A stretch of 63,993 bases of DNA, the filler included, from Octopus bimaculoides (lineage: Eukaryota), in the NCBI RefSeq assembly GCF_001194135.2. It is 4 parts of 3 records of this genome, joined end to end, with 100 filler letters (N's around TTAATTAATTAA, not from the genome) between each part and the next. Parts side by side here need not be neighbours in the genome. Positions count along the whole stretch, not along the records: positions 19,177 to 46,891 come from NC_069006.1; 3 more parts are not named here. One strand, given 5' to 3'. A program made the translations under genes and the position numbers. Of this stretch, positions 19,177 to 39,722 are shown one piece after another (positions within the stretch are counted from its first letter, which is position 1; every line of letters begins with the position of its first letter). The notes under the pieces are model-generated. The model was not told where the DNA came from. It was given only the letters and a program-made list of their open reading frames with translations, and made no database searches.

Positions 19177-19239
<63 letters not shown>

Positions 19240-19331: not shown

Positions 19332-19466
19332 TTAGTGCTTCGTATTCTTCCTCTTTTATCGGTAAGGCTATGTCCGGAGTGCTGGTCTTCATCTTCTGAT
19401 TGACCAAACTTTGCAAATGGTTACACCAAATATCAATGACCTGTAACAAAGCATACAAAGATATAA

Positions 19467-19505
<39 letters not shown>

Positions 19506-21113
19506 GTGTTCTTGAGCAAGACACTTTATTTCACATTGCTTCATTTTAATCAATTGTAGAAATGAGTTGCGATGCCACTGGTGCCAAGCTGTATCGGCCC
19601 CTTTGCCTTTCCCTTGGATAACATCAGTGGCATGGACAGGAGGGGAGGCTGGTATGGATGGATGACTGCTGGTCTTCCACAANNNNNNNNNNCAGTGGCA
19701 TGGACAGGAGGGGAGGCTGGTATGGATGGATGACTGCTGGTCTTCCACAAACAACCTTGTTTGGACTTGTTCTTTGGAGGGGAACTTCCTCGATGCAATC
19801 CCATGGTCATTCGTGACTGAAATCAATGGTACTATTGCAGACTTTTTGGCTATATTCTTAGAACATATAAACTCTTACCTTTTTGTATAAAGAATTTGTC
19901 ACTTCTTCTCGTTCTAAGAAGAAATAGACGTTGGCCATGTTGAAATATCCTCCAGAAGTCTGAATATCAAGAGTTCCATATTTCTCTGATGCCAAATATA
20001 TCTGGAAAAACCAAAAACAACCAGAAATTCACCTTTTTTTTTTTTGTCATAAATGTCTTTAAATCAATAAATTCATTTATTTTTTTTCTAAGAATGGTAA
20101 GGGAGGTAGCAGGAACACAGTGTTGCTACTTTACAGTCTCTAATTCCGAAAGATAACAGTTCTTGGTTCAATTCCAAGTGGGTTATGAATTTCTTTTTTT
20201 TTTTTACCTTTTATCATTTCAAAAATACAAACAAAAAATATAATATTCTAACAGAATATATTTAGTTAATGATGTATATATATAGAGAGAGAAAGACAGA
20301 GAGACGAACGGATGGACGGACGGACAGACGGACGGACAGACAGACAAACACACAGACAGACAGACAGACAGACAGATATATAACTGTGTGTGTGTGTTGT
20401 GAGTTTTGAACCCTACTTGAGTTCTATTTTTACAAGCATTACAAAAGAAGCTGAGAAGGCGAGCAGACAGAGCCGTTAGCTCGCCGGGCAAAATGCTTTA
20501 CGTTCTGAGTTTAAATTCCACCGAGGTCGGCAAAATGAGTACCAGTTGAGCCCTGGGGGTCAATGAAATTGACTTAAACCGCACTCCACAAAAAAATTTG
20601 AGGCTTTGTGCTTTTAGAAAAAGATTATGAAAGAAGCTCGATTCGGTGCAAGGCAGATAACTCTTGTGAAGTGTAGTCAGACGCTGGAATTTGATAACAT
20701 GATGACGTAAATAAATTGGTTACCATGGAGATTTTAAAATTTCATTTATCTTATTTCATTTGAAGCTGTTCCTTTATCTCTTATCTTTTATGTGTTTTAG
20801 TCATTGAACTGCGGCCACAGGTCTCTTTTGCTGTTGCTGCTGCTTCTACCACCACCACCACCACCACCGCTAACAACACCACTACCACCATCACTAAGGT
20901 ACGGGGACGTAAACAAACCAGCACCGGTTATCGAGCAGTTGTTGGGCAGTAACACATACATACATACACACGATGCGCTTCTTCTAGTTTCCATCAAACA
21001 AATACACTCTTAAGGGCCAGCCTGAGGCTATAGTAGAAGCCTCTTGCCACAGGTGCCATGCAGTGGGACTGAACCTGGAACCATGTGGTTGGGTCACAGA
21101 CTTCTTGACCTCG

Positions 21114-21156
<43 letters not shown>

Positions 21157-23827
21157 CGTCTTCAGCCAGTTCATCCAGGGCTTGTTGGTAGTTTTCTCTG
21201 ACCATAGACAACTTGGCCATCGTCCGCTTCACCATGTGGTTGCATTTGGTGCCAGTCACTTTGTTCTTTGTCTCAAACCAATTAATCAGAGATAAATAGT
21301 TGGCCGCCTCGTTTGTCTGACCCAAGCCTGTCAACAACAACAACAACAGCAACAACATTAATAACAACAACAAACAGCAATACCAACAATAACAACACCT
21401 AAACTTTGTGTGTGTGTGTGTGTGTGTGCGTGCGCTTTGTGTGTGTGTGTGTGTGTGTGTGTCTTTGTGTCTGTGTTTGTCTCCCCCATCACCACTTGAC
21501 AACCGGTGCTAGTATGTTTACGTCTCCATGACTTTGCGGTTCGGCAAAAGGCACCAATAAGGATGCGTATCAGGCTTTAAAAAAATAAGTCCTGGGGGTT
21601 GATTTATTCAACTAAAACCCCTCGAAGGCGGTGCTCCAGCATCGCTGCGGTCAAAAGGGTGAACGAAATAAAAGAAGATCATCGTTTGTAACGAGATAAT
21701 TACGAAAACGAAAGTAGGGTTTGTCCTTACCGAGCAAACATTCAGCAAGAAGTAAATAAGCCGGGAGCCACTCAACGCCTTCGGCCTTGAATAACATCTT
21801 GTAGAGACGCAGACATTGAAGAGCCGGTGGAATAATAAGCTTGTAATTGCCTTCAAACAGATGTCGGTGTCCATGCAAGAGACACATATTTATAAGTTCA
21901 AGCTGTCAACAAATACAGAAGAAATATAAATATTATCACCGTGCGATTACTAAAGAAAATAGTTTAATAATGGAGCATATAAGCCCTCGATGGAAAAAGT
22001 AGGTATTCTGTACGCATGGGACGGGGGAAGCTACTTTTTTCCGTTGAGGGTTTATATGGTCCATTATTAGACTATTTTCTTTAGCCATTGCACGGTGATC
22101 ACTTAGAAGCTTTAAGCTTATAATATATGTTGTGTGGGGAGGGTCATATTGTCTTAATGGCCAAATCGTTAATCAGTTAATCGTTAATTTACAAAGTTAA
22201 CATTTTCGTTAACGATCTAACTTTTAAGTTAATTTTGGAAATTATTATCAGACTAATTAACTTCGGTTAACTCAAGTTAAATATTGACAACAAAACGACG
22301 GCTTCCAAATCCTGTTTCCTGACTGGGTGAAAATGATCAAACTTTATAAAACTCTAGTCTTGGCAGTCAAACGGAAAAGATCCGATCTTTTTTATTTCCT
22401 GGAATTTTCTGAAACTTTTTGTGAATTTGTATTCTACACACAGGAGTTCTTACGATTATGCACCCCCCACCCAAAAATGGTTTTCGTGCATGATTCAAGA
22501 CTTACTTAGCTGTTATTTTTAGCACATCTCATACCGCATGTGTTTTAAGCATTTAATAAGTGACAAAAAGAACGTGATAAGTAGCTTGGTGTGGAGGCGC
22601 AATGGCCCAGTGGTTAGGGCAGCGAACTCGCGGTCGTAGGATCGCGGTTTCGATTCCCAGACCGGGCGTTGTGAGTGGAACAGAAATTGAAGAAATTGAA
22701 ATTGTGGCAGCCAAACAGAAAACAATCCAAAAGATAAAAGAACGTTAATTAAAACGAGATAATTAATTGTTTACTTTAGTATTGAGGATGCTTCGTTCAA
22801 GTGCTTGTTGTTGCAGCTTCCTTATGCTCCTTGCCGGCGGATTATAGAGGTAGATCAGGCTTTTACAGAGAAATCGGTGAATCCCCACCCAGTCCAGTTG
22901 TCGATGTTCTCGATTACTAAAACAAATTCAAGAAGAAAAAATAAACAAAAGTAAACAAAAGAAGGAGATGAAAGAACGGACGTGTTATTGATTTAATTAT
23001 TTTGTGTGATTAAATTTTGGATTGCTTGGGAAGGGGCTACACTAGTCGTCATCATCACCATCATCACCATCATCGTCATCATTATCAACATCATCATCAT
23101 CATCGTAGTCATTATTTCTAAATGCTTAACTTTATTCTTCATTTTATTCTTCATGCTGTTTTGTACTTTCTTCCTTGTAATCTGACCATGAAGATAAAAT
23201 TTTAAAGTCAACCTGACCCCACACCTTTTTTTGTTTTTGTCCCTTTCTTTATTTCTGTATTTTGTATTTTGACCATAACTGTATTTTGTCTGGTCACTAC
23301 AACTCTGGGTCTAGTTTTGTCTGTAAATTGCTGAAAATAACACACTGCTTTGCATATGCTTTCTCACAATGAAATCATCATCATCATCGTCGTCGTCGTT
23401 TAACGTCCGCTTTCCATGCTAGCATGGGTTGGACGATTTGACCTGGTGAAACCAGGTGGTTACACCAGGCTCCAATCTGGACAATAAAATATAAACTGAA
23501 AACTTTTAAAAAAGTAACCAAAATAAATCTAGATGAAGTTTAACATCATGTAGAATGTAACACCGTGTAGAATGTAACATCGTGTAGAATGTAACATCGT
23601 GTAGAATGTAACAGTGTGTAGAACGTAACAGTGTGTAGACGGTGTAAGAGTATGTAGAAGCAGTCCACTTACCAATAAGCAGCTATTTTACAGCCTTTGC
23701 ACCTCAGCCAGGCAGGTAAGCCGCACACATCACAGAAGATGTAGGTGCCTTTGGGATTAGCCAAGGGGTAGAGTTTCAAAGTGCTGCCTCTTGTGGCAGG
23801 CGTCTTTTCTGCCTTATTCTCCGACAT
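19332..23827 (-). CDS. ZMYND12-like paralog (MYND zinc finger + TPR-like helical region), exons 1-6 found, 3' end missing
   Basis: Exons with GT-AG boundaries: 23827-23673 (MSENKAEKTPATRGSTLKLYPLANPKGTYIFCDVCGLPAWLRCKGCKIAAY), 22916-22775 (CNREHRQLDWVGIHRFLC...), 21902-21731 (LELINMCLLHGHRHLFEGNYKLIIPPALQCLR...WLPAYLLLAECLL), 21327-21158 (GLGQTNEAANYLSLINW...ELAED), 20001-19879 (IYLASEKYGTLDIQTSGGYFNMANVYF...), 19440-19332 (VIDIWCNHLQ...). Exon 2-5 lengths (142/172/170/123) and all phases match the + strand gene. Exons 7-8 not identified; a scaffold join lies at 19077-19176. Confidence 0.88.
23544..23640. repeat. 17-bp minisatellite (about 6 units) CATCGTGTAGAATGTAA in intron 1 of the ZMYND12-like paralog
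   Basis: Tandem units read directly from the sequence. Confidence 0.85.
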
Positions 23828-24399
23828 CTTCTCCCTAATGAACGGGAAACAAAGATATGAGGATATATGAATACAATAAAAAGAAATAACAAGAAAGAAA
23901 GGAGGTAGGAAGGGAAGAAAGAAAGAAAGAAAGAAAGAAAAGGAGAACAACAAATCACTCATAAATGGCCATCATTCAATGTTAATGGTTTTTGATTGTC
24001 TGTTGTTTACTAGAAAAAAAAATCTCCTTTGCCGGAAATAGCAAGCACCTGTTTCTCATTAGCAGTTTACTAATTATTTATTCATCACATGCTTTTTTAC
24101 ATGTTGATTAACCTTTCATCGTCTAGCATAAAGCCATCTCCTTCTCTGCTGCACGCTTGCTCGGTTGAGGAAACATTTTTATAAGTCTTGTGGATTACAT
24201 GATAATTTCACCAGTGTTGGTGCCATGTAAAAGCAACTGGTACATTTCTGTAAAGTGGCTGGTGTTAGGAATGGCATCAAGTTGTAGAAATCAGGACAAA
24301 AGTGAGACCTGGGAGCAAGACGTGGTCCTCCGACCCATTAGATCCTGTCAAACTCTCCAACTCATACTAATTCAATACACAGAGATGTACAAATAGGGC

Positions 24400-24900
24400 T
24401 CACTAGGGCACAATTCTTTGTCCTTTTCTATTTACCATAGTCCTCCTGACCATAATGGAAGAGCTCAAAACCAAATATTCATAGGAACTACTATATGTCG
24501 AGGACTTAGTTCTAAGAGCTGAATTTGTAGATTTAGGGAAGAAATCCCAGGTGTAGAAGCACTAGCGTAGCTAGAGTGTGTGCCACCCGGGGTGGCCCTT
24601 CTGTTTACCATTCTGCACTCTACAGAAAACACATATTGTCTACAGCACACCCATTGGATGTGCAATGTCAGTGTGCATAAATGACGGAAGACAAATGTTT
24701 GGAGAAAAACTAGGCATGTGAGGAATTGGACGTAGTGTGCAAGAGAGAAGACGGTGTTGGTTTGCGCCTGTGATGCATGTGGACGAGTGCTGGTCATTTG
24801 CAGTGGCCATGGAAGAGAGAGAGAGATGTGGAAAGATGTAATATGAAGTGGTGAAGACTGATCTCTGATTGTTGGTGTTAAAAAGGGGGAATCTAGCAGT
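24400..24900 (+). mobile_element. Decayed RTE-clade LINE reverse transcriptase fragment
   Basis: MEELKTKYS*ELLYVEDLVLRAE (decayed WELLYADDLVL) and EKLGM..VQERRRCWFA.VMH; stops and an internal deletion. Confidence 0.7.
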
Positions 24901-25060
24901 AGAAACAAAAGATAAAACTAAGGCACTGGAGCAAGAAAAGGGTCTGCCATCCTGTTTGATCTCATGAAACCATCCCAGCCATGCTTACATCAATCTATCT
25001 ATTTATCTATCTATCTGTCTATCTATCTATTTACATCCATACACACACACACGCATAAAT

Positions 25061-25095
<35 letters not shown>

Positions 25096-26908
25096 GATAT
25101 AGATGAACCAAATTTAATGACTGGCACTCGTGCCAGTGGAGCGTTAGCAGCACCATCCGAGCGGGATCACTGCCAGAGCAGCGTCTCGCTCCCGTGCCAG
25201 TGGCACGTAAAAAGCACCATTTGAGCGCGGTCGTTTCCAGCTTCGTCTTACTGGCAATTGTGCTGGTGGCACGTAAAAGCACCCACTACACTCTCAGAGT
25301 GGTTGACGTTAGGAAAGGCATCCAGCTGTAGAAACTCTACCAGATCAGATTGGAGCCTGGTGCAGCCATCTGATTCGCCAGTCCCTAGTCAAATCGTCCA
25401 ACCCATGCTAGCATGGAAAGCGGACGTTAAACGACGACGATGATATATATATATATACATATATATATATTTGTATGCCTAAGACGCAAAGTAGTCGAAC
25501 TTGTCTGATGTATCGATGTGCTTCACGTTTGTAACTAATAAACCATAACACTCAGATATCCAACAATGGCACCGAAAACTTCGTCACAACCTCACATCTT
25601 CTCACGCCACAATAAACACGCCGTCAGGTCCGGACAGGTCTTTTCACCGAACAAAAGGCCTTTACGACAGACAACAATAACGTCCGCCGCTACTGCTGCT
25701 GCTGCTGCTGTTGTCGTTGCTGCTGTTGTTGCCGCTGTTGCTGTTGTTGCTGTGTGTTTGCATGTATATACGTATATATTTATAGCGTACGTACGTACGT
25801 TCAAACGTATGTATGTATGTATGTATGTATGTATGTATGTATGTATGTATGTGTGTGTGTGTGTATGTATGTATGTGTGTATGTGTATATGTGTAAGTCT
25901 GTGTGTGTGCGTGAGTGATGGGGGGAAGGCGTGAGTATGTGTGTGTGAGTCCGTGCGTGCGTGCATACGTGCGGGGGTGTGTATGTGTGTGTGAGATTCT
26001 GTGCGCGTGCTAGCGTGCGGATGTGGTGTGGTGTGGTATGTGTGTGCGTGGGCGCGCGCGCTATTGTATATATGTACAATCATGGTGTTCCTACATTCAT
26101 GAGGCCTGCTATTCGTATTGGCACTGGATGTCTTGCCCCTGGCTTATCTCAGGATCATATTGGTAGGAGTGGAGAAGGTCTGTGAGGTGCTGGGTCAGAT
26201 TATTGGACCTAAAACTTTTGTTGGAAAAGGCATTGCCCCGGAGGAAGGCATGAGAGAGGCACTGGAACAGCCGCTCTGACTCACAGGGTTTGCACTTGAA
26301 CCCAAAGAATTATTTCTATGAACTCTATTATTACAAACCTGATCACCTTCTCTGAACCTTCAAGCCAATCTTCTGTCATTTCAAATAGTTCTTTTTTTTG
26401 TCGGAGATTTAGAAACAAAATCCTAAGTTTACAAAATACAAAAATAAACTTCGCTATGCATTTATGGAAAACGACCAGTTCAAATAAAATACATCGTTGG
26501 AATTCTCTTGGCGTTTCGGCCCCACGAGCTCATCACATGAGAGATGGATTCGAACGATATAGAGAACTTAGATAGATCGCCCTCACAAGAACATCGACGG
26601 ACATATATGGGTTTTTTCATTCTTTTTGTTTCCCTTTTCTGTCACGATGTATCGTCTGCTGCTTTTGTAAACTATTTTATATTTTCTAATGGTTTGTAGG
26701 TACGTGCTATTTCGTTATGCAATCATAATATACTATAAAGCATATTAAACGTTTCTATAAGTCAATACCATGCTCTACTGTGTTAGCAGGGCTCTTACAT
26801 CACTTGTTGAGGCTATCTCTACAGATTCTCTATAGAAATTATAGCCAACACTGATTTTTGTTATTACGTTTCGTAAGCAAACAATAAGGTCGAAGATGAA
26901 AAATGAAT

Positions 26909-26963
26909 AATGGGCATATATGCCATATTTCGGGGGTGTCTTTCTCCTTCATCAGCACCCATT
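26909..26963 (-). ncRNA. Type I hammerhead ribozyme-like motif
   Basis: Minus strand parses as AAUGGGUG CUGAUGA A GGAG-AAAGACAC-CCCC GAA AUAUG-G-CAUAU A UGCCCAUU. Core intact, helix I 8 bp (2 G.U), helix II with one mismatch, palindromic helix III, AUA cleavage triplet. Confidence 0.55.
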
Positions 26964-27354
26964 AAACCATTAATCATCCCCAAACACATTGCTTAAAAAG
27001 CCCCAATATTTGAAACGGACGATCTCTCCGGCGATCTCTCTGACGAGAGAGGTGTGTGCGTATGTTTGTGTGTGAATGTGTATGTGTGTACGAATGTCTG
27101 CATGTGGGTTTGTGTGAGTGAATGTGTGTGCTTTTGCGAGTGGGTGCGCGGACGTGTGTGTGTGGTGTGTCTACACATACAAGCATTACATCATATAAAA
27201 ATCAAAGCCGACATTTCGCGATGAGGAAGTTGGTTTCACTGTCCACAATAATCTAATCGACCGGTGATAAAAAAAACTAATAATCAAAAAACCCGAAACT
27301 GTATAATTAATCGTTCCACTATTTCCATATCAGTTGTGTCCCTTCCACGAATTC

Positions 27355-27369
27355 GTTGCCTTTAGCAAC
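27355..27369. promoter_or_regulatory. RFX X-box candidate
   Basis: GTTGCC-TTT-AGCAAC fits GTNRCC-N(0-3)-RGYAAC and lies about 190 bp upstream of the ZMYND12 ATG. X-boxes are an established feature of ciliary gene promoters. Confidence 0.6.
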
Positions 27370-27559
27370 CCGTCTCTCAGTTCGTCTCCATATACTCACA
27401 CACGTACATATATATATATATATATGCACACACACAGATATACATAAATACACGTCCAACAGATTTGACACCCATGTTGTTGTTATTATTATTATTATCA
27501 AGGTACTTCTTTCCGAAACTTCTAGTATTTTTTCGGTCGATCGACTGAAATCCGTCAAT

Positions 27560-29033
27560 ATGAGCGTCTACCCGTTTGCCGTCCCCAAGGGAATCAAGCT
27601 TTTGTGCGAGCTCTGCCAAAAGTCTGCCAACCTCGTCTGCACTAATTGTAAAGTGACTTATTATTGGTAAGAGGCCTTTTTTGTTGCTTTTTAATGTATT
27701 GGGGTGGGGTGGGGTGGCTTTTTGTTTGTTTCGGTTAGTTATGTTTTTCGTTTGTTTGTTTGTTTATGTGTTGTTGTGGTTGTTGTTCTTATTGTTGTTG
27801 TTATATTTCCCAGTTGTTCCGGCCACCAAACGTCGGACAAGGAGAGTGTCCATTCTTGTATCTGTGACAATCTCGCCAAAGTCAGACAACCTGAGAAATA
27901 TGGAATTTCCGAAGAACAACGTCAAAAACGCAAAGAAGAAATTCGGCAGCTGAATGTCAGTCTCCCAACTCTTCTATTAATTCTTAGTTTTTTTTCCAGC
28001 AGCCCCTCTTAAGAATTTTCCATTGCTCAATAAACTATGGTAATTACAGGTACCACTAACACACTAGTCACTGAGTTGCAGAGTTTATTTTATTTATTTA
28101 TCTATTTATGTTCACAGATTGAGATAATTCAAACTGCCACCACTAGAGCGCACCACCTGTTGTTTCAAGGATTACACGAACAGGCCCTGCCCGCAGCCTT
28201 GCATTCGGTTAAATTTTGTATGGAAATTTATGGACCGCAAAGTATTGAACTCATTCCTTCCTACCTCTGTCTTGGAGAGGCTTGTATTGGTAGGTATTTC
28301 TACCACTCAGTCTACCTAGTCATCATCATCATCATCATCATCATCATCGTATAATGTCTGTTTTCCATGTTGGCATGGGTTGGACGGTTTGACTAAAGCT
28401 GGTAGGCTAGAGAGTCGCTCCAGGTTCCAGTCTGACTTGGCCTGGTTTCTGCGGCTGGATGTCTTTCTTAATGCCGACTACTTTACCGTGTGAGCAAGGT
28501 ATTTTTAACAAGGAACTGTGTGAGCACTTCAACGTGGCACCGGCATGAGTGCCGTGTCCATGGCACTGGCACAAAACTCTTGCAGGCCAATCTTCCTTCC
28601 AGAAGGAATGGCCTTCATACTTCTGCTGTGTCGGACGGGTCTTCTTGAGTACAGCAAAGGGCCAGGTATCCTGGTCCTTCGTCATTTTTGTCTCAAAGGT
28701 TCAGTGTCCTGAGGATGTCCTTCAGGACTTCGTCCCATCATGTGTGTATGTATTCTTGTTTGTATTTTTCAGTTTATGATTTTCCCTCCACTCTTTCCAC
28801 CCTCCCCCACATTCGCAGTCTTTATTTATATTTTTTCTACTGTCATATCTACAATATTAAACACAGCCCCACTCCATACCCTACCCCACTGAAAATCTTA
28901 ACACAAAACCTATTTTGGCTTTACATTCTCTCTCTCTCGCACACACTCACACTCTATCATTCTCACTCACACACACACTATTTCTATGTCTGTCTTTCTA
29001 TCTTACTGTCTGCCTCGCTATCTACCTACCTAC

Positions 29034-29092
<59 letters not shown>

Positions 29093-32009
29093 CCTGTCTA
29101 TTTATCTATCTATCTATCTATCTATCTAACTACCTGTCTATCTATCTATCTACAAAGACCTTTCCAACTGTTTCAGGTTTAGGAAGACTTGCTGATGCCG
29201 AGCAGTATCTCTCTCAAGCAAACTGGATTGCTTTGACAAACCCCAAGTGTCCCAGTTCCATCTTGTACAACCTTCATCGCAATCTCGGCCTACTCTATGC
29301 TGCCAAAGGGGATTATGCAGAAGCTGCTCGTCATTTTGCTGATGATGTAAGTGAAATACTATGCTTGGCTTTCAATTTAGTTGGCTTTCCACTCGAGAAG
29401 GGCTCTCATTGAAGTCTTGAGTGGGAGTGAGAGGACAGGTGCAAAAGGTAAGGATGACCAATCAAGATCTGATTGAGGACCCCCATTTACTGTGGTCCCG
29501 AGCCATGTCTTTAACCTGTTCCAAAATAAATTCATAGCCCTAAACACCAGAAAAGAGGTTTTATTTTACTATGCCAAATAAATTTGAGCCTCTATTTAAA
29601 TTTAAGCCTTTATTTAAATTTCAGCCCCCACCTAAATTTAAGTCTCCACCTTAATTTGAGCCTCTATTTACATTTGAGTCTCCACCTAAATTTGAGCCAC
29701 AATCTAAATTTAAATTCCTCTCTTAATTTAAAACTTCCACCTAAATCTGTTCCTGTCATTCTCCTCTTCTAATGCCATTATCTTCATCCCAATCTCCTTC
29801 CAGTCTTTGACTTCATTTTTGGTTTTATTTCTTTCCTCTTTAGATTTACCATGCATCAGAAGAATATGGCACAGATTCCTTGAAAACATCCGGGGGTTAC
29901 TACCACATGGCCAATGTTTTCTTCCGACAGAGCAAAATGGATATTGCAATGTCACTCTACAGACAGGTTTTTATCATTTTAATTATCAATTAATTGTCTT
30001 CTTCTTTAATCCAAAATACAATTCAGAGGTGAGGGGCAAGAACTTGGGACTTACTGTGCATCCTAAAGCTTTCTTTTTCTTTTATTATTACAACAATATT
30101 CCAATAGTGTAAAGGTGCGTGGCCTAGTGGTTAGGAGGTTGTGCTCATGATTGCATGATCATGGTTTCAATTTCCAGACTGGGTGGTGCATTGTGTTCTT
30201 GAGCAAGACACTTCATTTCCCATTGCTCCAGTCCACTCAGCTGGCAAAAAGGAGTAATCCTGTGAACCGTCCACATGGGGAATATATACGTCCCAGAAAC
30301 TGGGAAACTAGCCCTGTAAGCCTATATGATTTGGGAAGGAACTTTGCTGTACTTTAATCACTGGATCAGGATTAGGGGAATATATTTAATTACAAAGAAA
30401 CAAAGATAAGGATAAAAAAAAAGGGGGAGAGATAAAGCATCAAAAGATGTGGGAGCAAGTACACTCCAGAACAAATGGCACAGTCAGCTGTGCCCTGTGG
30501 ACATGACCATGATGGTGTTGCCATGGAGAATGACCAGTGATACTCAATGCAGTAGCCATCCCACCTTTTGTGGCTCATTTCTCAGATGGGCCACAGTTAT
30601 TCTGACCTCATGGAGGAAATCTGGAGTACGGATTCCAAGAAAACCTGAAGTTTTGAATGCAAGTGACACAAAGCAGCTGGTCAGTCTCCTATATCTAATT
30701 ATTTCTCTCTCCTTTTACTGTTTTAATTTCAAAACTAATCAATTTAATTATAATTTATAAATTTAAAACTAATCAAAGACACATTCAATGTTTTATGATT
30801 GTTGAAGGTGACCAAAATTTGGCACAACTACTTGTTAGAAATTGCTTCCGACAAGATAAAGAAATTGTCCAGTCCCAAGACATTAGCAGCTGTTAATCTA
30901 ACATCAGAACACAGAACCGGACTCGGTGAGTGAAGGGAATGAATGGCATTCCTTTATCGAATTGATAGTCTGAAGAATAAGAGGAAAGAGTGCATGGCCC
31001 AATGGTGGTGGTGGTCGTCGTGGCAGTGATGGGATGAGGGGTGGGTTATTGCAGCAGTGACGGTGGTGGTAGGGATAGTAGAAATAGTGATGGTGGTGGT
31101 GATGATGATGATGGCAAGGGCAGTAGTGGTGGTAGCAGCAGCAATGGAGGTGGAGGTAGCGGCAGTGATGGTGCTGTGTGGTTGTGGTGCTAGTGCCGAT
31201 GTTGGTGGCGACAATGGTGGCGGTCGCGTTTGTGGGGGGGGGGGGGTAATAGTGGTGATGATCATAGTAGTGTCAGTGATAGCAGCAGCAGCAGCAGCAA
31301 GGGTGATTGTTTTAGTGGTGGTGGCCAGTAGTTGACTGGGTTTGTACAGTTTATGCTGTGTTCCATTTGCAGAAAACCAAAGGGACAGCCTGTACGTGGG
31401 CCAGGATTAGGGTTAAGGTTAGCGTAATGAAATTTTGAATGGATCTGTCTCGTTTCTGCAGAAAAAAAGGGTTAATTTTGTTTATTGTTAATTTTCTTCA
31501 TTGTGACAGATGAAACAGATGAAGCAGAAGGTATCCAGGTTTTGAGTACCATTTTCGATATCTGGGAATCTAGCCACAAGAAACACTCAAAAGATTTAGC
31601 TGAGTCCAGCCTTGCATTAGCCATGTTGTTCTACTGCCTCGAACAATATGACAAGGTAAGACGTGGTTATTTCCCTTTGACGTTTCAGGTCTGAAGGAGA
31701 CAAAATGATAATAATAATAATTATTATTATTATTCCTACCACACATCCATATACACAATTATTTCTTTTTACCCAAAATTACAATAGAATCAATTGATTT
31801 AGATATAGACATAGTAAGTTGAGAGATTTTGTTCCATTGTAAACCAAAGGTGGGTAGTTTTAGACAGGTTAGTTAATAAGATTTCCAAATCTGTTTTCTG
31901 ATTGCAGGCAAAGAAATTCTGCAACAAGGCATACCAAGTTTGCGAAGACAAAGAATATACTGAGATCATCCTTAAGTTTCTGAATTCCAGTAAAGAACTC
32001 TCTCCATAA
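27560..32009 (+). CDS. ZMYND12: Zinc finger MYND domain-containing protein 12 (axonemal inner dynein arm-associated, Chlamydomonas p38 family), complete, 359 aa
   Basis: 8 exons: 27560-27666, 27814-27955, 28118-28289, 29177-29346, 29844-29966, 30808-30925, 31510-31655, 31908-32009 (1080 nt, ATG to TAA, all GT-AG, phases consistent). Motifs YPFAVPKGIKLLCELC..VCTNCKVTYYC...H, ALPAAL, LIPSYLCLGEA, LHRNLGLLY, TSGGYYHMANVF and DETDEAEGIQVL match the ZMYND12 sequence as I recall it. Confidence 0.93.
29580..29745. repeat. Degenerate 18-bp minisatellite (about 9 units, ATTTGAGCCTCCACCTAA-like) in ZMYND12 intron 4
   Basis: Tandem units read directly from the sequence. Confidence 0.75.
30105..30340 (+). 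mobile_element. tRNA-headed SINE family D; body/3' part also at about 19500-19820
   Basis: GGCCTAGTGGTTAGG...GGTTTCAATTTCCAGACTG head, then TTGTGTTCTTGAGCAAGACACTT shared with the 19500 copy. Confidence 0.6.
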
Positions 32010-32646: not shown

Positions 32647-34505
32647 TTAAACTCCTTTAGTTCCACATGGTGGTGCAATCAAATTCGGCCAATCACAAGC
32701 TTCTTTTGTTGGATCAAAGAACAAAGCTGTGAAGAGACAAAAAAGAGAAAGAAAGAAAACTGTTAAGTGATGTAATCTTACATATGTAACATAGTGAGCT
32801 CATTCCCCCTAACTACTACTACTACTACCACCATCACTACTATTAGTACTGCTGCTACTACTACCACCGCCACCACCACCACCACCACTACTACAACTGG
32901 AATAACCAGATTTAATTTCACAGTGAAAAGGGTTAGACTTACAAGCAGGACATTTCACATAACCATGGAACTTGTCCCGTAAACAGGAATAATAGAATTT
33001 ACAACTGCGACTGTAGTCAGGGTAGTTGCCATCCCATAATCCTGTGCAGTTTGGGGCTGTACCACATGGTGGGTCCACTTTATCAAGGCTGCAAAAAAAA
33101 AGAAACAGAAAAAAAAGTAAAGTTCGTCGTAACTCTGAGTGGTCGTTAAATAGGTAGGTCGTTAAATGAGGACAGTCTGTATATATATATAAACACTATG
33201 CTCATTATTATATTAGGTGACATACAAATGTACGTACGTACATACATATTATGAGTTCCAATGTAGTTTTCATCAACAAAATGTCATTCTTATGGTATGT
33301 GTTAATCCAGACACTTTCAGAGGGATTGAACTTTGAACCAATGTTTTTGTAAAGCAAGCTTCTTAACCATACAGCCACAGCTACATTCACACTTTACAAC
33401 AATACATACTATATATAAAATACACATGAAATATATACTTACTAATCACAATACATATAGAGCTTATTTACCACAAGATCATGAGGACAGGATATGTTTA
33501 CAGTTTTACCATCTTTGCAGCGATAGAACCATCTGCATCCTCCGATGTATAAACCATTCTGTTTGTTTATACAAAGAGTACTCTGGTTACCCTTTTCAGG
33601 AGAAACTGTTGCTTGATTTTGTTCAGGTAGATGTGTGGTAAAACTGGTGCTTTGAGCTGAAATTTTATAGAAACAATTTGGGTAAAATTAAAATGTTTAT
33701 TTGAATATTAAGGGGGAAAAACGAAAAATGTTAGCAGTGAGAGAAAATTTTTAAAAATTGTCTGAAATATCAATTTCAAATGTTGGTACAAGAGCAGAAA
33801 TTATTAGGGGAAGAGTAAGTTGATTACAGTGACCCCAGTATTCAACTGGTACTTATTGACCCTGAAAAGAAAAAAGGAAAAGTCGACCCTCGGTAGAATT
33901 TGAACTCAGAACGTAAAGTTGGATGAGGTTCCGTTTAGCAGTTTGCCTGGTATGCTATCAGTACTGCCAAGAATTGTCTAAAATATCAAAATTAAAACTA
34001 GAGGGTGAATAGGGGACCCATGCCAGTTGTGAGCTGTCAGGACACTGACCCCTTCACAAATTCCATGCTTCCTGATATTCACCAACTCTATTCCCGATGT
34101 GTCTTTGTGCCTTTTCCTTTTTGTCGCTCCTTTAATGTTCACTTTTCGGTCTTCTTCTGTTTTATTCTGTGTGCTGTGCATCTACTATTTGCCTTTCATT
34201 GCTGTCTTTCTTGCTAATTGTGTGGATTTATATATATGTGTATTTTCTCATAACATGTGCCTGATGTAATCTTAAGTCCTGAATTTATATCGAAATTATT
34301 AAAGTTTTCAGACGATTACGAAAAAAACAGGAACAACAAAAAAAACCTCCATCCTTTTATGAGATACTTTTTTGTACAAAACTACCCCCAAATCTTCTTA
34401 AACTGTAAAAATTATTAGAAAAAGAAAAGAAAAATCCAAAATGTCCTTACCGAAAATACAACTGAAGAAAATTCCCAAAGTTAAAATGACAACTGGAACT
34501 TTCAT
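32647..34505 (-). CDS. Secreted peritrophin-like protein with two CBM14 (ChtBD2) chitin-binding domains, complete, 164 aa
   Basis: Exons 34505-34451, 33656-33443, 33088-32943, 32726-32647 (495 nt, GT-AG, phases 1/2/1). Protein: MKVPVVILTLGIFFSCIFA QSTSFTTHLPEQNQATVSPEKGNQSTL CINKQNGLYIGGCRWFYRCKDGKTVNISCPHDLVVNKLYMYCDYLDKVDPPCGT APN CTGLWDGNYPDYSRSCKFYYSCLRDKFHGYVKCPASLFFDPTKEACDWPNLIAPPCGTKGV*. Hydrophobic signal peptide, two 6-Cys domains. AATAAA on - at 32634-32639 and 32592-32597. Confidence 0.9.
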
Positions 34506-36036: not shown

Positions 36037-39000
36037 TTAATTAATTTTAAGTGGGTCAGCATCGATGTTTGAAACACAAACTTCAACTGTAAGTTCGCTC
36101 AGTAGGTTTTCCAACGAGATTTTCAACTGCGACAGGTAACCCCTTTCTGTGTTGCTGTGCTCACAGAGGAGCACCGAGGATCCATTATGGATTGCATCCA
36201 GTACATCATGATGGGACATCTCACCGGAGACATAGAGGTCAGCCCTGACACCCCTGAGGACAGTGGAGCCGGAACCAGCACACACAGCAACCGTCTTTAT
36301 GGTTTTATCGGCTGAAATGAGAGAAAGAAGAGAAACTTTTAGATTACAAAAGAATTTCAGTTAAATTTACACACAACAGGCACAGGTGTATATTAAGTGG
36401 CTCCGGCCCCTGAAAGGACCAGCTTGTATGTGCAGAAGACAGAGATTTTACTTAGTTTGATGTGTTTTATACCAAGTACACCAAATCACCACAACTCCCA
36501 GTCCCTTGTTATTTCCTTAGTGAGGCCCAGTATCTAAAGATCCTTTGTCCCATGTCTTTCTCAGTCAACTCCTTTCCACAGTTAGGGCTCGGCACTTCTT
36601 TTCACAGCTCTCCTCATCCATACAAACATACATATACTGCGTATAAGACATAAAGGGTCTTTCCTGTGATTATATATTTAATTGTTCTCATGAAAGAAGT
36701 GAAACAAAAAGAAAACACAAACAGCAAATGAGGGGGGGGGAATACAAAAAAAAGATGAGATTGAAAGAAGGAAAAAGGGAAAGAAATGATAAAGGGAGAA
36801 TTAGGGGAAAAAAGGGAAGGAAAGAAGAAAAGAAACTCACTGAAAGAGAATCCTGGTCCATGTGCTGTGGCTACTCGAAGATGGGGCAATTTGAGGTGTT
36901 TCTTGATAATTTCAATTGCTTCTGTCAAAGTAATACTAGTCTGGAGTTTAGCAATTCTACCGATTCCAGTATCTGGCATTGGAGGCTAGAATATTGGAAA
37001 GAAAATAATAATAATAATAGTAATAATAATAATAACAATCCTTTCTACTACAGGCACAAGGCCTGGAATTTGTTAAAGAGGAGACTAGTCGATTACATCA
37101 ACCCCAGTGCTTGACTGGTACTTATTTTATCAACCCCGAAACAGTGAAACGCAAAGTCGACTCTGGCAGCATTTGAACTCAGAACACAAAGACAGATGAA
37201 ATGCCACTAAGTATTTTTGTCCTGAGCAATAACGGTTCTGCCAGCTCAATAATAAATGCCCTGAAGCAGTCCCAGGCACAGGCTCTCATGGCTTCTGATC
37301 TTAACTGATTGGAAGTGTCATCATGGACATTGTTTTGTCTTGGTGTAAAAGATGGGCGACAGCAAATATTCTGCTTAATACCACAGATTTGCTTGTCAGT
37401 TGTTTGGCCTTAACCAGTTGAGCATGTCTCTTGGTGGCTGACGATATGTGCATCTCTGATCATGAGCAGAAGTAGTGGGGGAGCATCATAGTCATGTGTT
37501 GAAAGGGATTCTTTTGGGGAGGTTGAATAATTCATTCTTGGAAACATGGGTGTTTCGTTCATCATCTTTAAATAGCCCTTATTCAGGGACCTTTTGAACG
37601 ACATGGACTACTGAACATGAAGAAAATTCTAACTGGGCCCCACCTGCAAGGTCATGTGCTGTTTATCTTGGTCACCATTGTGCACACATATGGTTGTGAT
37701 GCATGTGCCTGGTGTACCCTTATCAGACGGGGAGTCATGATGGGTATATTGGGCTTCGTATATTTGTACCCCAGTGTCACTTTGATGGCATGCACTGCTC
37801 TCTCACTCAATAATAATAATAATAATAGTATATCTGTACCTTAGCAACTTCAGTGAAAACAGGGTCTTGTATAGAATGCGACTTCAAAATTTGGGCAATG
37901 GTTTGTAAAGAAGATTTCTTACACAAGAATGAAACAAAGAAACCATCTTCTCTGGCTGAATCACTGAAAAAAAATAAAGAAAAAGGAAAAAGATAAATAA
38001 GGAAATTATACAAAATTTAATTCTTTCTCATTNNNNNNNNNNNNNNNNNNNNNNNNNNNNNNNNNNNNNNNNNNNNNNNNNNNNNNNNNNNNNNNNNNNN
38101 NNNNNNNNNNNNNNNNNNNNNNNNNNNNNNNNNNNNNNNNNNNNNNNNNNNNNNNNNNNNNNNNNNNNNNNNNNNNNNNNNNNNNNNNNNNNNNNNNNNN
38201 NNNNNNNNNNNNNNNNNNNNNNNNNNNNNNNNNNNNNNNNNNNNNNNNNNNNNNNNNNNNNNNNNNNNNNNNNNNNNNNNNNNNNNNNNNNNNNNNNNNN
38301 NNNNNNNNNNNNNNNNNNNNNNNNNNNNNNNNNNNNNNNNNNNNNNNNNNNNNNNNNNNNNNNNNNNNNNNNNNNNNNNNNNNNNNNNNNNNNNNNNNNN
38401 NNNNNNNNNNNNNNNNNNNNNNNNNNNNNNNNNNNNNNNNNNNNNNNNNNNNNNNNNNNNNNNNNNNNNNNNNNNNNNNNNNNNNNNNNNNNNNNNNNNN
38501 NNNNNNNNNNNNNNNNNNNNNNNNNNNNNNNNNNNNNNNNNNNNNNNNNNNNNNNNNNNNNNNNNNNNNNNNNNNNNNNNNNNNNNNNNNNNNNNNNNNN
38601 NNNNNNNNNNNNNNNNNNNNNNNNNNNNNNNNNNNNNNNNNNNNNNNNNNNNNNNNNNNNNNNNNNNNNNNNNNNNNNNNNNNNNNNNNNNNNNNNNNNN
38701 NNNNNNNNNNNNNNNNNNNNNNNNNNNNNNNNNNNNNNNNNNNNNNNNNNNNNNNNNNNNNNNNNNNNNNNNNNNNNNNNNNNNNNNNNNNNNNNNNNNN
38801 NNNNNNNNNNNNNNNNNNNNNNNNNNNNNNNNNNNNNNNNNNNNNNNNNNNNNNNNNNNNNNNNNNNNNNNNNNNNNNNNNNCATCAAGACCTTGAAGCT
38901 ATGAGGTAATCCATAATGAACTCAAAAGAACGTGAATAGATATGTATTACATTTGACAGAATAATCTGAATGCTAAAGGATTAATGTATCTTTTAGCCAA

Positions 39001-39208: not shown

Positions 39209-39722
39209 TTCATACTTTACCAAATGCACTGAGGAGCCAATCATTAACACCATTCTTCAAAGCATCGCAACTAGTGTGGGGGGAGTAGATGGCGATTCGA
39301 TTTTCAATGGCTCGGACGATTAATTTCTGCTTCCAGGAACTCTGGCAAAGTCGTTTTAAAGGACTGAAAATAGGAGGATGATAAGACAAAATAAAATTAG
39401 CCTTTAAGTCGATAGCTTCGTTTAATACTTCAGGAGTGAGATCGTTGGTGAGCAGTATTTTAGAGACATTGTGTGGTTGAGTTGGTTCAACTAACAATCC
39501 AACATTATCCCAACTCTCTGCAAGAGACGGCGGCATAAATTCATTGAACAAGGCCACTATTTTGGATAAGTTTCCTTTTTTGCTTGATGACATCTCCAAA
39601 GATGATAACGATTGCGAACACAAGTTTTTCTGGCAGATCGATGCGATCTTAGGCGGTATTTTAAGACGGCTAATTCGAAGGAAGAACCTGCTGTTGACAA
39701 CGACCCGCGACAGAAATGTCAT
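36037..39722 (-). CDS. NIF3L1: NIF3-like protein 1 (DUF34 / GTP cyclohydrolase 1 type 2 homolog family); one internal exon unsequenced
   Basis: Exons 39722-39221 (LAESWDNVGLLVEP, LLTNDLT, ILSYHPPIF, YSPHTSCDA, GVNDWL), 37963-37840, 36985-36841 (PPMPDTGIGR...IKKHLKL), 36311-36037 (VAVCAGSG, GEMSHHDVLDA, LCEHSNTERGYL, DPL*). The first exon ends in phase 1 and the next visible exon starts in phase 2, so an exon is missing, probably in gap 38033-38882. Confidence 0.93.
37265..37825 (+). mobile_element. Interspersed repeat ending CACTGCTCTCTCACTC(AAT)n, probably a LINE 3' region
   Basis: Related pieces at about 14520-14640 (-) and 56940-57020 (+); (AAT)n tail. Confidence 0.6.

What the first reader, a model, noticed from the sequence alone, without database searches (positions are those of the whole stretch)
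19332..32009. Old head-to-head duplication of ZMYND12 with fully conserved exon architecture
Two ZMYND12-family genes diverge from a 3.7-kb spacer. Exons 2-5 have identical lengths (142/172/170/123 nt) and all phases match, yet by hand count the proteins share only 21/41 residues in exon 5 and 15/56 in exon 4. The - copy has no stop or frameshift in six exons, keeps all MYND ligands and has a 16-aa N-terminal extension, which argues for long-term selection. ZMYND12 (Chlamydomonas p38, partner of TTC29/DNAH1) is, as far as I know, usually single copy. A retained divergent paralog could mean specialised inner-arm dynein complexes, e.g. sperm flagella versus somatic cilia (inference).
Basis: partly seen in the sequence, partly recalled or inferred. 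Interest (0 to 1): 0.7.

Follow-up and report, generated by a model that had tools for sequence, protein, structure and literature searches.

The report
Old ZMYND12 gene pair in octopus
Octopus carries two back-to-back copies of ZMYND12, a docking protein for a flagellar motor; the second copy is very divergent but intact, conserved across cephalopods and under purifying selection, so it is a real lineage-specific paralogue whose role is untested.

Summary
The piece is Octopus bimaculoides chromosome CM046626.1. The + gene (A, 8 exons, 359 aa) and the - gene (B, 6 exons visible) are both ZMYND12 homologues. Exons 2-5 are 142/172/170/123 nt in both, with the same phases. The proteins share 33% identity.

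The 10-N gap lies in B intron 5, inside a collapsed tandem repeat, and touches no exon. B exons 7-8 fall in a 1152-N gap at the piece edge. They are present in O. sinensis and Argonauta hians.

B is not a pseudogene: dN/dS is 0.08-0.15, the same as A. It is intact in three octopods, and a spliced B-type transcript exists in a more distant cephalopod. Argonauta keeps the head-to-head layout.

An exhaustive profile search found B-type proteins only in cephalopods. Likelihood placement puts B on the stem of the cephalopod A clade (RELL 0.94-0.96). The duplication is therefore cephalopod-specific and older than the octopus-cuttlefish split.

B's predicted fold matches axonemal ZMYND12 (TM 0.78-0.86). 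Annotated first exons of the two genes lie 309 bp apart, which suggests a shared promoter.

Both genes are already annotated in public databases. Specialised inner-arm dynein docking is plausible but untested. Interest is moderate to low.

The parts
27560..27666 (+). ZMYND12-A exon 1. Holds the ATG of isoform X2 and the first half of the MYND finger. In isoform X1 the exon starts at 27526.
27814..27955 (+). A exon 2 (142 nt, phase 2). Holds the second half of the MYND finger.
28118..28289 (+). A exon 3 (172 nt)
29177..29346 (+). A exon 4 (170 nt)
29844..29966 (+). A exon 5 (123 nt), the most conserved block (TSGGYxHMANVFF)
30808..30925 (+). A exon 6 (118 nt)
31510..31655 (+). A exon 7 (146 nt)
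31908..32009 (+). A exon 8, including the stop codon
26689..26699 (+). Coding part of the upstream first exon of A isoform X1 (ATG GTT TGT AG|gt), spliced to 27526
   Evidence: the joined sequence reproduces the N-terminus of XP_014774051 (P0025).
26339..26379 (-). Coding part of the upstream first exon of the NCBI model of B (MTEDWLEGSEKVIR), spliced to 23834
   Evidence: the joined sequence reproduces the N-terminus of XP_014774047 (P0001).
26380..26688 (.). The 309 bp between the two annotated first coding exons: candidate shared bidirectional promoter plus 5' UTRs. Inferred from gene models only.
27355..27369 (+). X-box (RFX-type) consensus GTTGCCTTTAGCAAC, 191 bp upstream of the A ATG
   Evidence: the only match in 27.7 kb, with 0.155 expected by chance; identical in O. 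sinensis, 188 bp upstream of its A ATG.
23673..23827 (-). Holds the 16-aa extension and the first half of the MYND finger.
22775..22916 (-). B exon 2 (142 nt). Holds the second half of the MYND finger with the canonical EH..DW.GIH...C.
21731..21902 (-). B exon 3 (172 nt)
21158..21327 (-). B exon 4 (170 nt)
19879..20001 (-). B exon 5 (123 nt)
19332..19440 (-). B exon 6 (109 nt). This is the last B exon in the piece. Exons 7-8 lie in the 1152-N assembly gap just beyond 19177.
19625..19750 (.). The 10-N assembly gap (19683-19692) with its exact 58-nt flanking direct repeat, in B intron 5. It is a collapsed ~176-bp tandem array.

Best explanation
This is a cephalopod-specific inverted tandem duplication of ZMYND12. 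ZMYND12 is the MYND-TPR adaptor (Chlamydomonas p38) that, with TTC29 (p44), docks inner-arm dyneins d/g at the base of radial spoke 3.

Shown here: the duplication happened on the cephalopod stem, after cephalopods split from the other sampled molluscs and before octopods split from the lineage of the cuttlefish-type A sequence.

Shown here: copy A stayed close to the canonical protein, at about 50% identity to other molluscs. Copy B diverged fast early on, with a stem branch about 2.4 times that of A. It has since evolved at the same slow rate as A under purifying selection. B keeps eight exons, all zinc ligands and the ZMYND12 fold.

Inferred from gene models: the two genes are transcribed divergently from a shared region a few hundred base pairs wide. 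An RFX X-box, typical of ciliary genes, lies nearby.

Inferred, not shown: B still works as an axonemal MYND-TPR docking adaptor but with changed TPR surfaces. That would let cephalopods build two versions of the dynein-d/g docking complex, either in different cell types or side by side in one axoneme.

The confidence given is for the whole statement. The evolutionary part alone is about 0.85 and the functional part about 0.4.
For: Identity. B equals XP_014774047 and A equals XP_014774052, both O. bimaculoides. PDB sequence matches are ZMYND12, p38 and TAX-1, plus weak MYND-domain-only matches for B. Scores against human ZMYND12 are 283 bits for A and 175-184 bits for B.

Fold. The AF2 model of full-length Argonauta B has pLDDT 89.5. 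It matches ZMYND12 chains in 9d2f, 8j07 and 9fqr with TM 0.78-0.86 over the whole length.

Age and origin.
- Head-to-head neighbours also in Argonauta, with ATGs 6.4 kb apart.
- A spliced B-type transcript at 48% identity comes from run SRR8281677.
- A profile search of 1.84 billion representatives gives three B-type proteins (748, 628 and 554 bits). The next hit drops to 237 bits.
- Likelihood placement puts B on the stem of the cephalopod A clade, 11.5 lnL better than any other branch. RELL support is 0.95, and 0.94-0.96 for alpha 0.6-2.0. Deep placements are 18-20 lnL worse, and placements inside crown A are 32 or more lnL worse.
- Five derived residues are shared by A and B, including R->W, which occurs in none of 32 outgroups. 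Control groups share 0-3.

Selection. dN/dS between O. bimaculoides and O. sinensis is 0.084/0.145 for B and 0.075/0.127 for A. The B ORF is intact across 8 exons in O. sinensis and Argonauta. A and B have equal branch lengths within Octopoda.

Promoter. Annotated first coding exons are 309 bp apart. The X-box is unique in the piece and conserved in O. sinensis.

Function of the family comes from PMC10266980, PMC10629824 and PMC11335240.
Against: - No expression data for octopus B could be examined. The transcription start sites are taken from predicted gene models.
- The species behind SRR8281677 is unknown. A cuttlefish origin is inferred only from the divergence and from the neighbouring run number SRR8281683, which yields a sepiid A transcript.
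- A and B both sit on long branches, so the likelihood result could be inflated by long-branch attraction. KH z-scores against other within-mollusc placements are only 1.6-1.8.
- Neighbour-joining with all taxa did not recover A+B (6% bootstrap).
- B has lost 53 of the strongly conserved family columns that A keeps, mostly in TPR exons 3-4. It may no longer bind TTC29 or dynein.
- In O. sinensis the two genes are on different scaffolds, so the layout could not be confirmed there.
- B exons 7-8 of O. bimaculoides itself are unsequenced.
Confidence: 0.65

Rival explanations
1. B has left the axoneme. After the duplication it became a MYND-TPR adaptor for some non-ciliary partner (neofunctionalisation), and its adjacency to A is only historical.
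For: B lost 53 strongly conserved family columns that A keeps, concentrated in TPR exons 3-4 (16 and 12 columns). Its MYND finger is more canonical than A's: Pfam zf-MYND scores 35 bits against 18.6. It also matches ETO/CBFA2T1 MYND domains, which bind peptide motifs. The post-duplication stem is long, at 1.14 substitutions per site.
Against: The most conserved ZMYND12 block (exon 5) is kept at 51% identity. The whole-length fold matches axonemal ZMYND12. The genes share a promoter region and an X-box lies nearby. No other family matches the TPR part better.
Confidence: 0.22
2. B is an ancient paralogue, pre-molluscan or pan-metazoan, that survives only in cephalopods. It happens to lie next to A.
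For: B is about equally distant (33-37% identity) from A, vertebrate and flatworm ZMYND12. Neighbour-joining with all taxa does not unite A and B.
Against: No B-type sequence outside cephalopods among 1.84 billion representatives. Deep placements are 18-20 lnL worse, with z 2.2-2.6 and RELL 0.014 or less. A and B share derived residues. Adjacency and inverted orientation are conserved in Octopus and Argonauta. The scenario would need many independent losses.
Confidence: 0.06
3. B is a decaying or untranscribed copy, or an annotation or assembly artefact. Its odd annotated C-terminus in O. bimaculoides would reflect real disruption of the 3' end.
For: The NCBI model XP_014774047 ends in 46 residues unrelated to ZMYND12. 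Exons 7-8 are not found in the sequenced DNA downstream. No octopus transcript contig for B was seen.
Against: O. sinensis sequence on both sides of exons 7-8 aligns to the two edges of the 1152-N gap, so the exons are simply unsequenced. O. sinensis and Argonauta have complete 8-exon ORFs. dN/dS is 0.08-0.15. A spliced transcript exists in another cephalopod. At 33% identity the copy cannot be a haplotig or a false duplication. No octopus transcript contig was seen for A either, so that absence is uninformative.
Confidence: 0.03

Closest known systems
ZMYND12 / Chlamydomonas p38 (FAP146) / Trypanosoma TAX-1: docking subunit of inner-arm dynein d, partner of TTC29/p44
   Same: N-terminal MYND finger with the same eight ligands, followed by a TPR solenoid. 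Eight coding exons, as in human. ZMYND12 is the best sequence and fold match for both copies (PMC10629824, PMC10266980).
   Different: B shares only 30-37% identity with any canonical ZMYND12 and has lost many conserved TPR positions. A is canonical in the TPR part but has a derived second half of the MYND finger: the DW motif is lost and Pfam zf-MYND scores below its cut-off. Neither copy has been shown to be axonemal in a cephalopod.
Head-to-head (bidirectional-promoter) gene pairs formed by inverted tandem duplication
   Same: Divergent orientation, paralogous partners, and annotated first exons 309 bp apart. The arrangement is conserved between Octopus and Argonauta.
   Different: Transcription start sites and co-expression were not measured. 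The distance between the main ATGs is 3.7 kb in Octopus and 6.4 kb in Argonauta.
Whole-genome-duplication ZMYND12 duplicates in salmonids and sturgeon/paddlefish
   Same: More than one ZMYND12 sequence per genome appears in the hit lists.
   Different: Those copies remain close to each other and to canonical ZMYND12. They are not expected to be adjacent, though that was not checked. The cephalopod B copy is a local, inverted and highly divergent paralogue.

Membership tests
ZMYND12 / p38 family | N-terminal MYND zinc finger with all eight Cys/His ligands | tested here: met
   Both copies carry C-x2-C-x7-C-x2-C-x5-C-x3-H-x8-H-x3-C. Pfam PF01753 scores 35.0 bits for B (cut-off 22.7) and 18.6 bits for A, which is below the cut-off although the ligands are intact.
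ZMYND12 / p38 family | C-terminal TPR solenoid with the ZMYND12 fold | tested here: met
   A scores 81.6 bits on TPR_12. The B fragment scores only 24.5 bits, below the cut-off. The AF2 model of full-length Argonauta B (pLDDT 89.5) superposes on ZMYND12 chains 9d2f_M, 8j07_d4 and 9fqr_Qq with TM 0.78-0.86. B exons 7-8 of O. bimaculoides itself are unsequenced.
ZMYND12 / p38 family | ZMYND12 as the best match, ahead of any other MYND or TPR protein | tested here: met
   The top PDB sequence hits for A, for octopus B and for Argonauta B are mammalian ZMYND12, then p38 and TAX-1. Database hits are named ZMYND12 or ZMYND12-like.
ZMYND12 / p38 family | Eight coding exons with conserved phases | tested here: met
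   A has 8 exons. B has 8 exons in O. sinensis and Argonauta. Exons 2-5 and 7 are equal in length and all phases are equal. Human ZMYND12 has eight exons (PMC10629824). Intron positions were not compared with human.
ZMYND12 / p38 family | Axonemal localisation and binding to TTC29 and DNAH1 (inner-arm dynein d) | not testable with these tools
   This needs proteomics, pull-down or imaging.
Cephalopod-specific paralogue (B subfamily) | Orthologues confined to cephalopods and sister to cephalopod A | tested here: met
   Only three B-type representatives exist among 1.84 billion proteins. ML placement falls on the A stem with RELL 0.94-0.96. Nautilus and squids were not sampled.
Bidirectional-promoter gene pair | Divergent transcription starts less than 1 kb apart, and co-expression | tested here: inconclusive
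   Orientation is divergent and the annotated first coding exons are 309 bp apart. These come from predicted models, and no transcript or expression data were available.
RFX-regulated ciliary gene | X-box motif near the promoter, conserved in relatives | tested here: inconclusive
   A single consensus X-box lies at 27355-27369, with 0.155 expected in the piece. It is conserved in O. sinensis. No strict match was found in the Argonauta spacer. Binding was not tested.

The most novel reading that the evidence does not exclude
Coleoid cephalopods have kept, for a very long time, two structurally distinct versions of the p38/ZMYND12 docking adaptor, expressed from one bidirectional promoter. The two may act together, for example as alternative or paired partners of TTC29 at the dynein d/g-RS3 junction. 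Alternatively they may divide labour between the sperm flagellum and epithelial or sensory cilia. Either way this would be a lineage-specific remodelling of an otherwise invariant part of the 96-nm axonemal repeat.
Probability: 0.3. Interest if true: 0.55.

Novelty: new member of a known kind. Interest (0 to 1): 0.3.

Why it matters
ZMYND12/TTC29 is a conserved docking module for inner-arm dyneins d and g, and its loss causes sperm flagellar defects in humans and mice. In the species listed in the searches it is a single gene, apart from whole-genome-duplication copies.

A second, strongly diverged copy that selection has kept across octopods, and apparently in a decapodiform, is a natural experiment. 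It shows which surfaces of the adaptor can change. It also hints at tissue-specific or composite inner-arm complexes in cephalopods.

It is also a clean, datable case of an inverted tandem duplicate that kept exon structure while protein identity fell to 33%.

There is a practical result as well. The public O. bimaculoides model of the B gene carries a spurious C-terminus, because exons 7-8 lie in an assembly gap.

Tried and rejected
- Neighbour-joining on all 40 sequences grouped every long branch together (flatworms, vertebrates, A, B). A+B bootstrap was 6%. I rejected this as long-branch attraction. After dropping other long branches, A+B bootstrap was 0.59-0.92, but only 0.12 at alpha 0.6. 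I replaced it with a likelihood placement scan of my own, using a rate matrix derived from Gonnet 1992 with four gamma categories.
- Searching with the distant B transcript P0003 for more decapodiform B genes returned only itself and octopus B. This used the last protein search, so a TTC29 copy-number check was impossible.
- A literature search for SRR82816xx to identify the species behind P0003 found only unrelated projects.
- A literature search for ZMYND12 with cephalopod terms, and one for the five RefSeq accessions, found nothing relevant.
- I looked for B exons 7-8 in the 15 kb downstream of exon 6 by tblastn with the Argonauta and O. sinensis proteins. None were found. The gap explains this.
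- I looked for A next to B in the O. sinensis chromosome scaffold. It is absent within 10 kb, and A is on an unplaced 41-kb contig that starts 4.6 kb upstream of the gene. This is an assembly limit, not evidence against adjacency.
- A second X-box-like site in O. sinensis (L005 position 3656) lies in unalignable sequence and was dismissed.
- I tested whether divergence is split cleanly by domain, with MYND kept in B and TPR kept in A. It is only partly so: in the MYND region each copy keeps about as many conserved positions as the other.
- ARAGORN found no tRNA genes in the piece, although the introns contain tRNA-like SINE sequences.
Full report
**Source and layout**

The piece (window 19177-46891) is identical to Octopus bimaculoides chromosome CM046626.1, assembly GCA_001194135.2. 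It ends at 19177 because a 1152-N assembly gap follows. Locus L001 coordinate equals 36380 minus the window coordinate.

**Observation**

I rebuilt both genes from the raw sequence using canonical splice sites.

- The + gene (A) has eight exons of 107/142/172/170/123/118/146/102 nt. It encodes 359 aa, identical to XP_014774052.
- The - gene (B) shows six exons in the piece, of 155/142/172/170/123/109 nt. They are open throughout and 100% identical to XP_014774047.
- Exons 2-5 have the same lengths and phases. Exon 1 differs by 48 nt, which is the 16-aa extension.
- Both proteins carry the same eight-ligand MYND pattern.
- A and B share 33% identity over 261 aa, E = 9e-50.

**The assembly gaps**

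The 10-N gap at 19683-19692 is inside B intron 5. It is flanked by an exact 58-nt direct repeat. The orthologous O. sinensis intron holds 18.8 copies of a 176-bp tandem repeat that matches these flanks. The gap is therefore a collapsed satellite and cannot affect the frame. The exon 5/6 junction has the same exon lengths in two other species and is spliced in a transcript.

The 3' end of B is the real weak point. Exons 7-8 are not in the piece and not in the 15 kb of sequenced DNA beyond it. The NCBI model instead ends in 46 unrelated residues.

O. sinensis sequence just before its intron 6 aligns to the left edge of the 1152-N gap. Sequence starting 157 bp after the B stop codon aligns to the right edge. 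So exons 7-8 are unsequenced in O. bimaculoides, not lost, and the odd annotated C-terminus is best read as an artefact.

**What the genes are**

Both have mammalian ZMYND12 as their best solved-structure match by sequence, followed by Chlamydomonas p38 and trypanosomatid TAX-1. Scores are 283 bits for A, 175 bits for the octopus B fragment and 184 bits for full-length Argonauta B.

An AlphaFold2 model of Argonauta B has pLDDT 89.5 and pTM 0.87. It superposes over its whole length on ZMYND12 chains in mouse and human respiratory cilia and bovine sperm doublets, with TM 0.78-0.86.

In the literature, ZMYND12/TTC29 (p38/p44) is the docking complex of inner-arm dynein d. Together with dynein g, it is joined to radial spoke 3. 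Its loss gives sperm flagellar defects in men, mice and trypanosomes (PMC10266980, PMC10629824, PMC11335240).

**Is B alive?**

- O. sinensis (377 aa) and Argonauta hians (372 aa) have complete eight-exon B genes. Exon lengths are 155 or 134/142/172/170/123/109/146/117 or 123 nt. Exon 7 (146 nt) therefore also equals that of A.
- dN/dS between O. bimaculoides and O. sinensis is 0.084 (NG86) or 0.145 (YN00) for B. For A it is 0.075 or 0.127.
- Within Octopoda the two genes have equal branch lengths, about 0.43 substitutions per site.
- A 1220-nt contig from run SRR8281677 is a spliced B-type mRNA covering exons 2-8 with an intact ORF. It has 48% identity to octopus B. Its 5' end runs into intron 1, so exon 1 is not seen.

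**How old, and from where?**

- In Argonauta, A and B are head-to-head with ATGs 6.4 kb apart.
- A profile built from the three B-type proteins was scored against 1.84 billion representatives. It returned those three at 748, 628 and 554 bits. The next hit, at 237 bits, begins the canonical ZMYND12s. There is no wider B subfamily in that collection.
- Distance trees were dominated by long-branch attraction. I therefore placed the B clade on every branch of a species-tree backbone by likelihood. The best position is the stem of the cephalopod A clade.
- That position is 11.5 lnL above any other, with RELL 0.95. It is 18-20 lnL above placements at the lophotrochozoan, deuterostome or cnidarian-bilaterian branches (z 2.2-2.6). 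It is at least 32 lnL above placements inside crown A. The result is stable for alpha 0.6-2.0.
- A and B share five derived residues absent or nearly absent in 32 outgroups, including an R-to-W change seen in no outgroup. Control clades share 0-3.
- The duplication is therefore cephalopod-specific. It predates the split between octopods and the sepiid-type A sequence (P0026, 95.6% identical to Acanthosepion pharaonis).
- The idea that SRR8281677 is also a decapodiform is inference. It rests on its divergence and on its run number, which neighbours that of the sepiid run SRR8281683.

**Pattern of divergence**

After the duplication the B stem accumulated 1.14 substitutions per site, against 0.47 for A.

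Among columns conserved in at least 80% of non-cephalopod sequences, A keeps 53 that B lost. These fall mostly in TPR exons 3-4. B keeps 16-21 that A lost, depending on the threshold. They include the canonical EH..DW.GIH of the second MYND half. Accordingly Pfam zf-MYND scores 35 bits for B but only 18.6 bits for A, below its cut-off. Exon 5 (TSGGYF.MANV.F) is the best-kept block in both.

**Regulation (inferred)**

The 3.7-kb 'spacer' between the main ATGs is largely 5' intron. The NCBI models add an upstream coding exon to each gene, at 26339-26379 (-) for B and 26689-26699 (+) for A isoform X1. Both have canonical splice sites and reproduce the database N-termini. They lie 309 bp apart.

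A single consensus RFX X-box, GTTGCCTTTAGCAAC, lies at 27355-27369. It is the only match in the piece, with 0.155 expected by chance. It is conserved at the same distance from the A ATG in O. sinensis, but no strict match was found in Argonauta.

**Verdict**

Both genes are already annotated in public databases as ZMYND12 or ZMYND12-like. I found no paper that discusses the pair.

It is a lineage-specific, long-retained, strongly diverged paralogue of a known axonemal adaptor, so it is a new member of a known kind. The suggested specialisation of inner-arm dynein complexes is plausible but untested. The rival that B has taken a non-axonemal role cannot be excluded.

Noticed in passing
L001 22108-22245 (outside the window; O. 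bimaculoides CM046626.1): The RefSeq model XP_014774047 ends in a 46-aa terminal exon with no similarity to ZMYND12. The true exons 7-8 fall in a 1152-N gap, so the public model has a spurious C-terminus.
   Followed up: yes
window 19625-19750; L005 24980-28337: A 176-bp tandem repeat fills B intron 5 in O. sinensis (18.8 copies, 95% matches). It is collapsed to a 10-N gap in O. bimaculoides. As assembled, intron 5 is 438 bp in one species and 5.5 kb in the other.
   Followed up: yes
window 27355-27369: A consensus RFX X-box lies 191 bp upstream of the A start codon. It is the only one in the piece, it is conserved in O. sinensis, and it fits a ciliary gene.
   Followed up: partly
window ~32650-34500, - strand: A gene with a chitin-binding peritrophin-A domain (Pfam CBM_14) lies downstream of A. 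The same neighbour follows A in O. sinensis. My own Pfam scan of one ORF fragment found nothing.
   Followed up: partly
window 36037-36285 and 39210-39590, - strand: Exons of a NIF3-like gene (Pfam DUF34_NIF3, E = 4e-37 and 4e-16). The gene is interrupted by assembly gaps at 38033-38882 and 40031-40302.
   Followed up: partly
window 23375-23478, 25119-25444, 28326-28482, 43293-43477, 44247-44441, 46584-46873: Copies of one interspersed repeat (core ...CCATGCTAGCATGGGTTGGACG...) lie in the introns and spacer of both genes. The repeat occurs many times in the O. sinensis locus as well. tRNA-like SINE segments at about 22590-22680 and 30110-30200 are not called as tRNA genes.
   Followed up: no
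L008 7885-8007 and 11575-11658 (Argonauta hians): The Argonauta A model (GAB1602245, 'partial', 288 aa) skips exon 5 and exon 8. Both are present and intact in the genome; exon 5 is 97.6% identical to octopus.
   Followed up: yes
L005 and L007 (O. sinensis GCA_006345805.1): In O. sinensis, B is on chromosome scaffold CM016884.1. A is on an unplaced 41-kb contig that begins 4.6 kb upstream of the gene. A second near-identical B protein (XP_036355036) sits on a 60-kb contig. These are probably assembly fragmentation or haplotigs.
   Followed up: partly
window 21097-21157 and 21330-21400: Microsatellites, (TAC)n and (GTT)n-like, abut the donor and acceptor of B exon 4 within a few bases of the splice sites. 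The whole locus is unusually rich in simple repeats.
   Followed up: no
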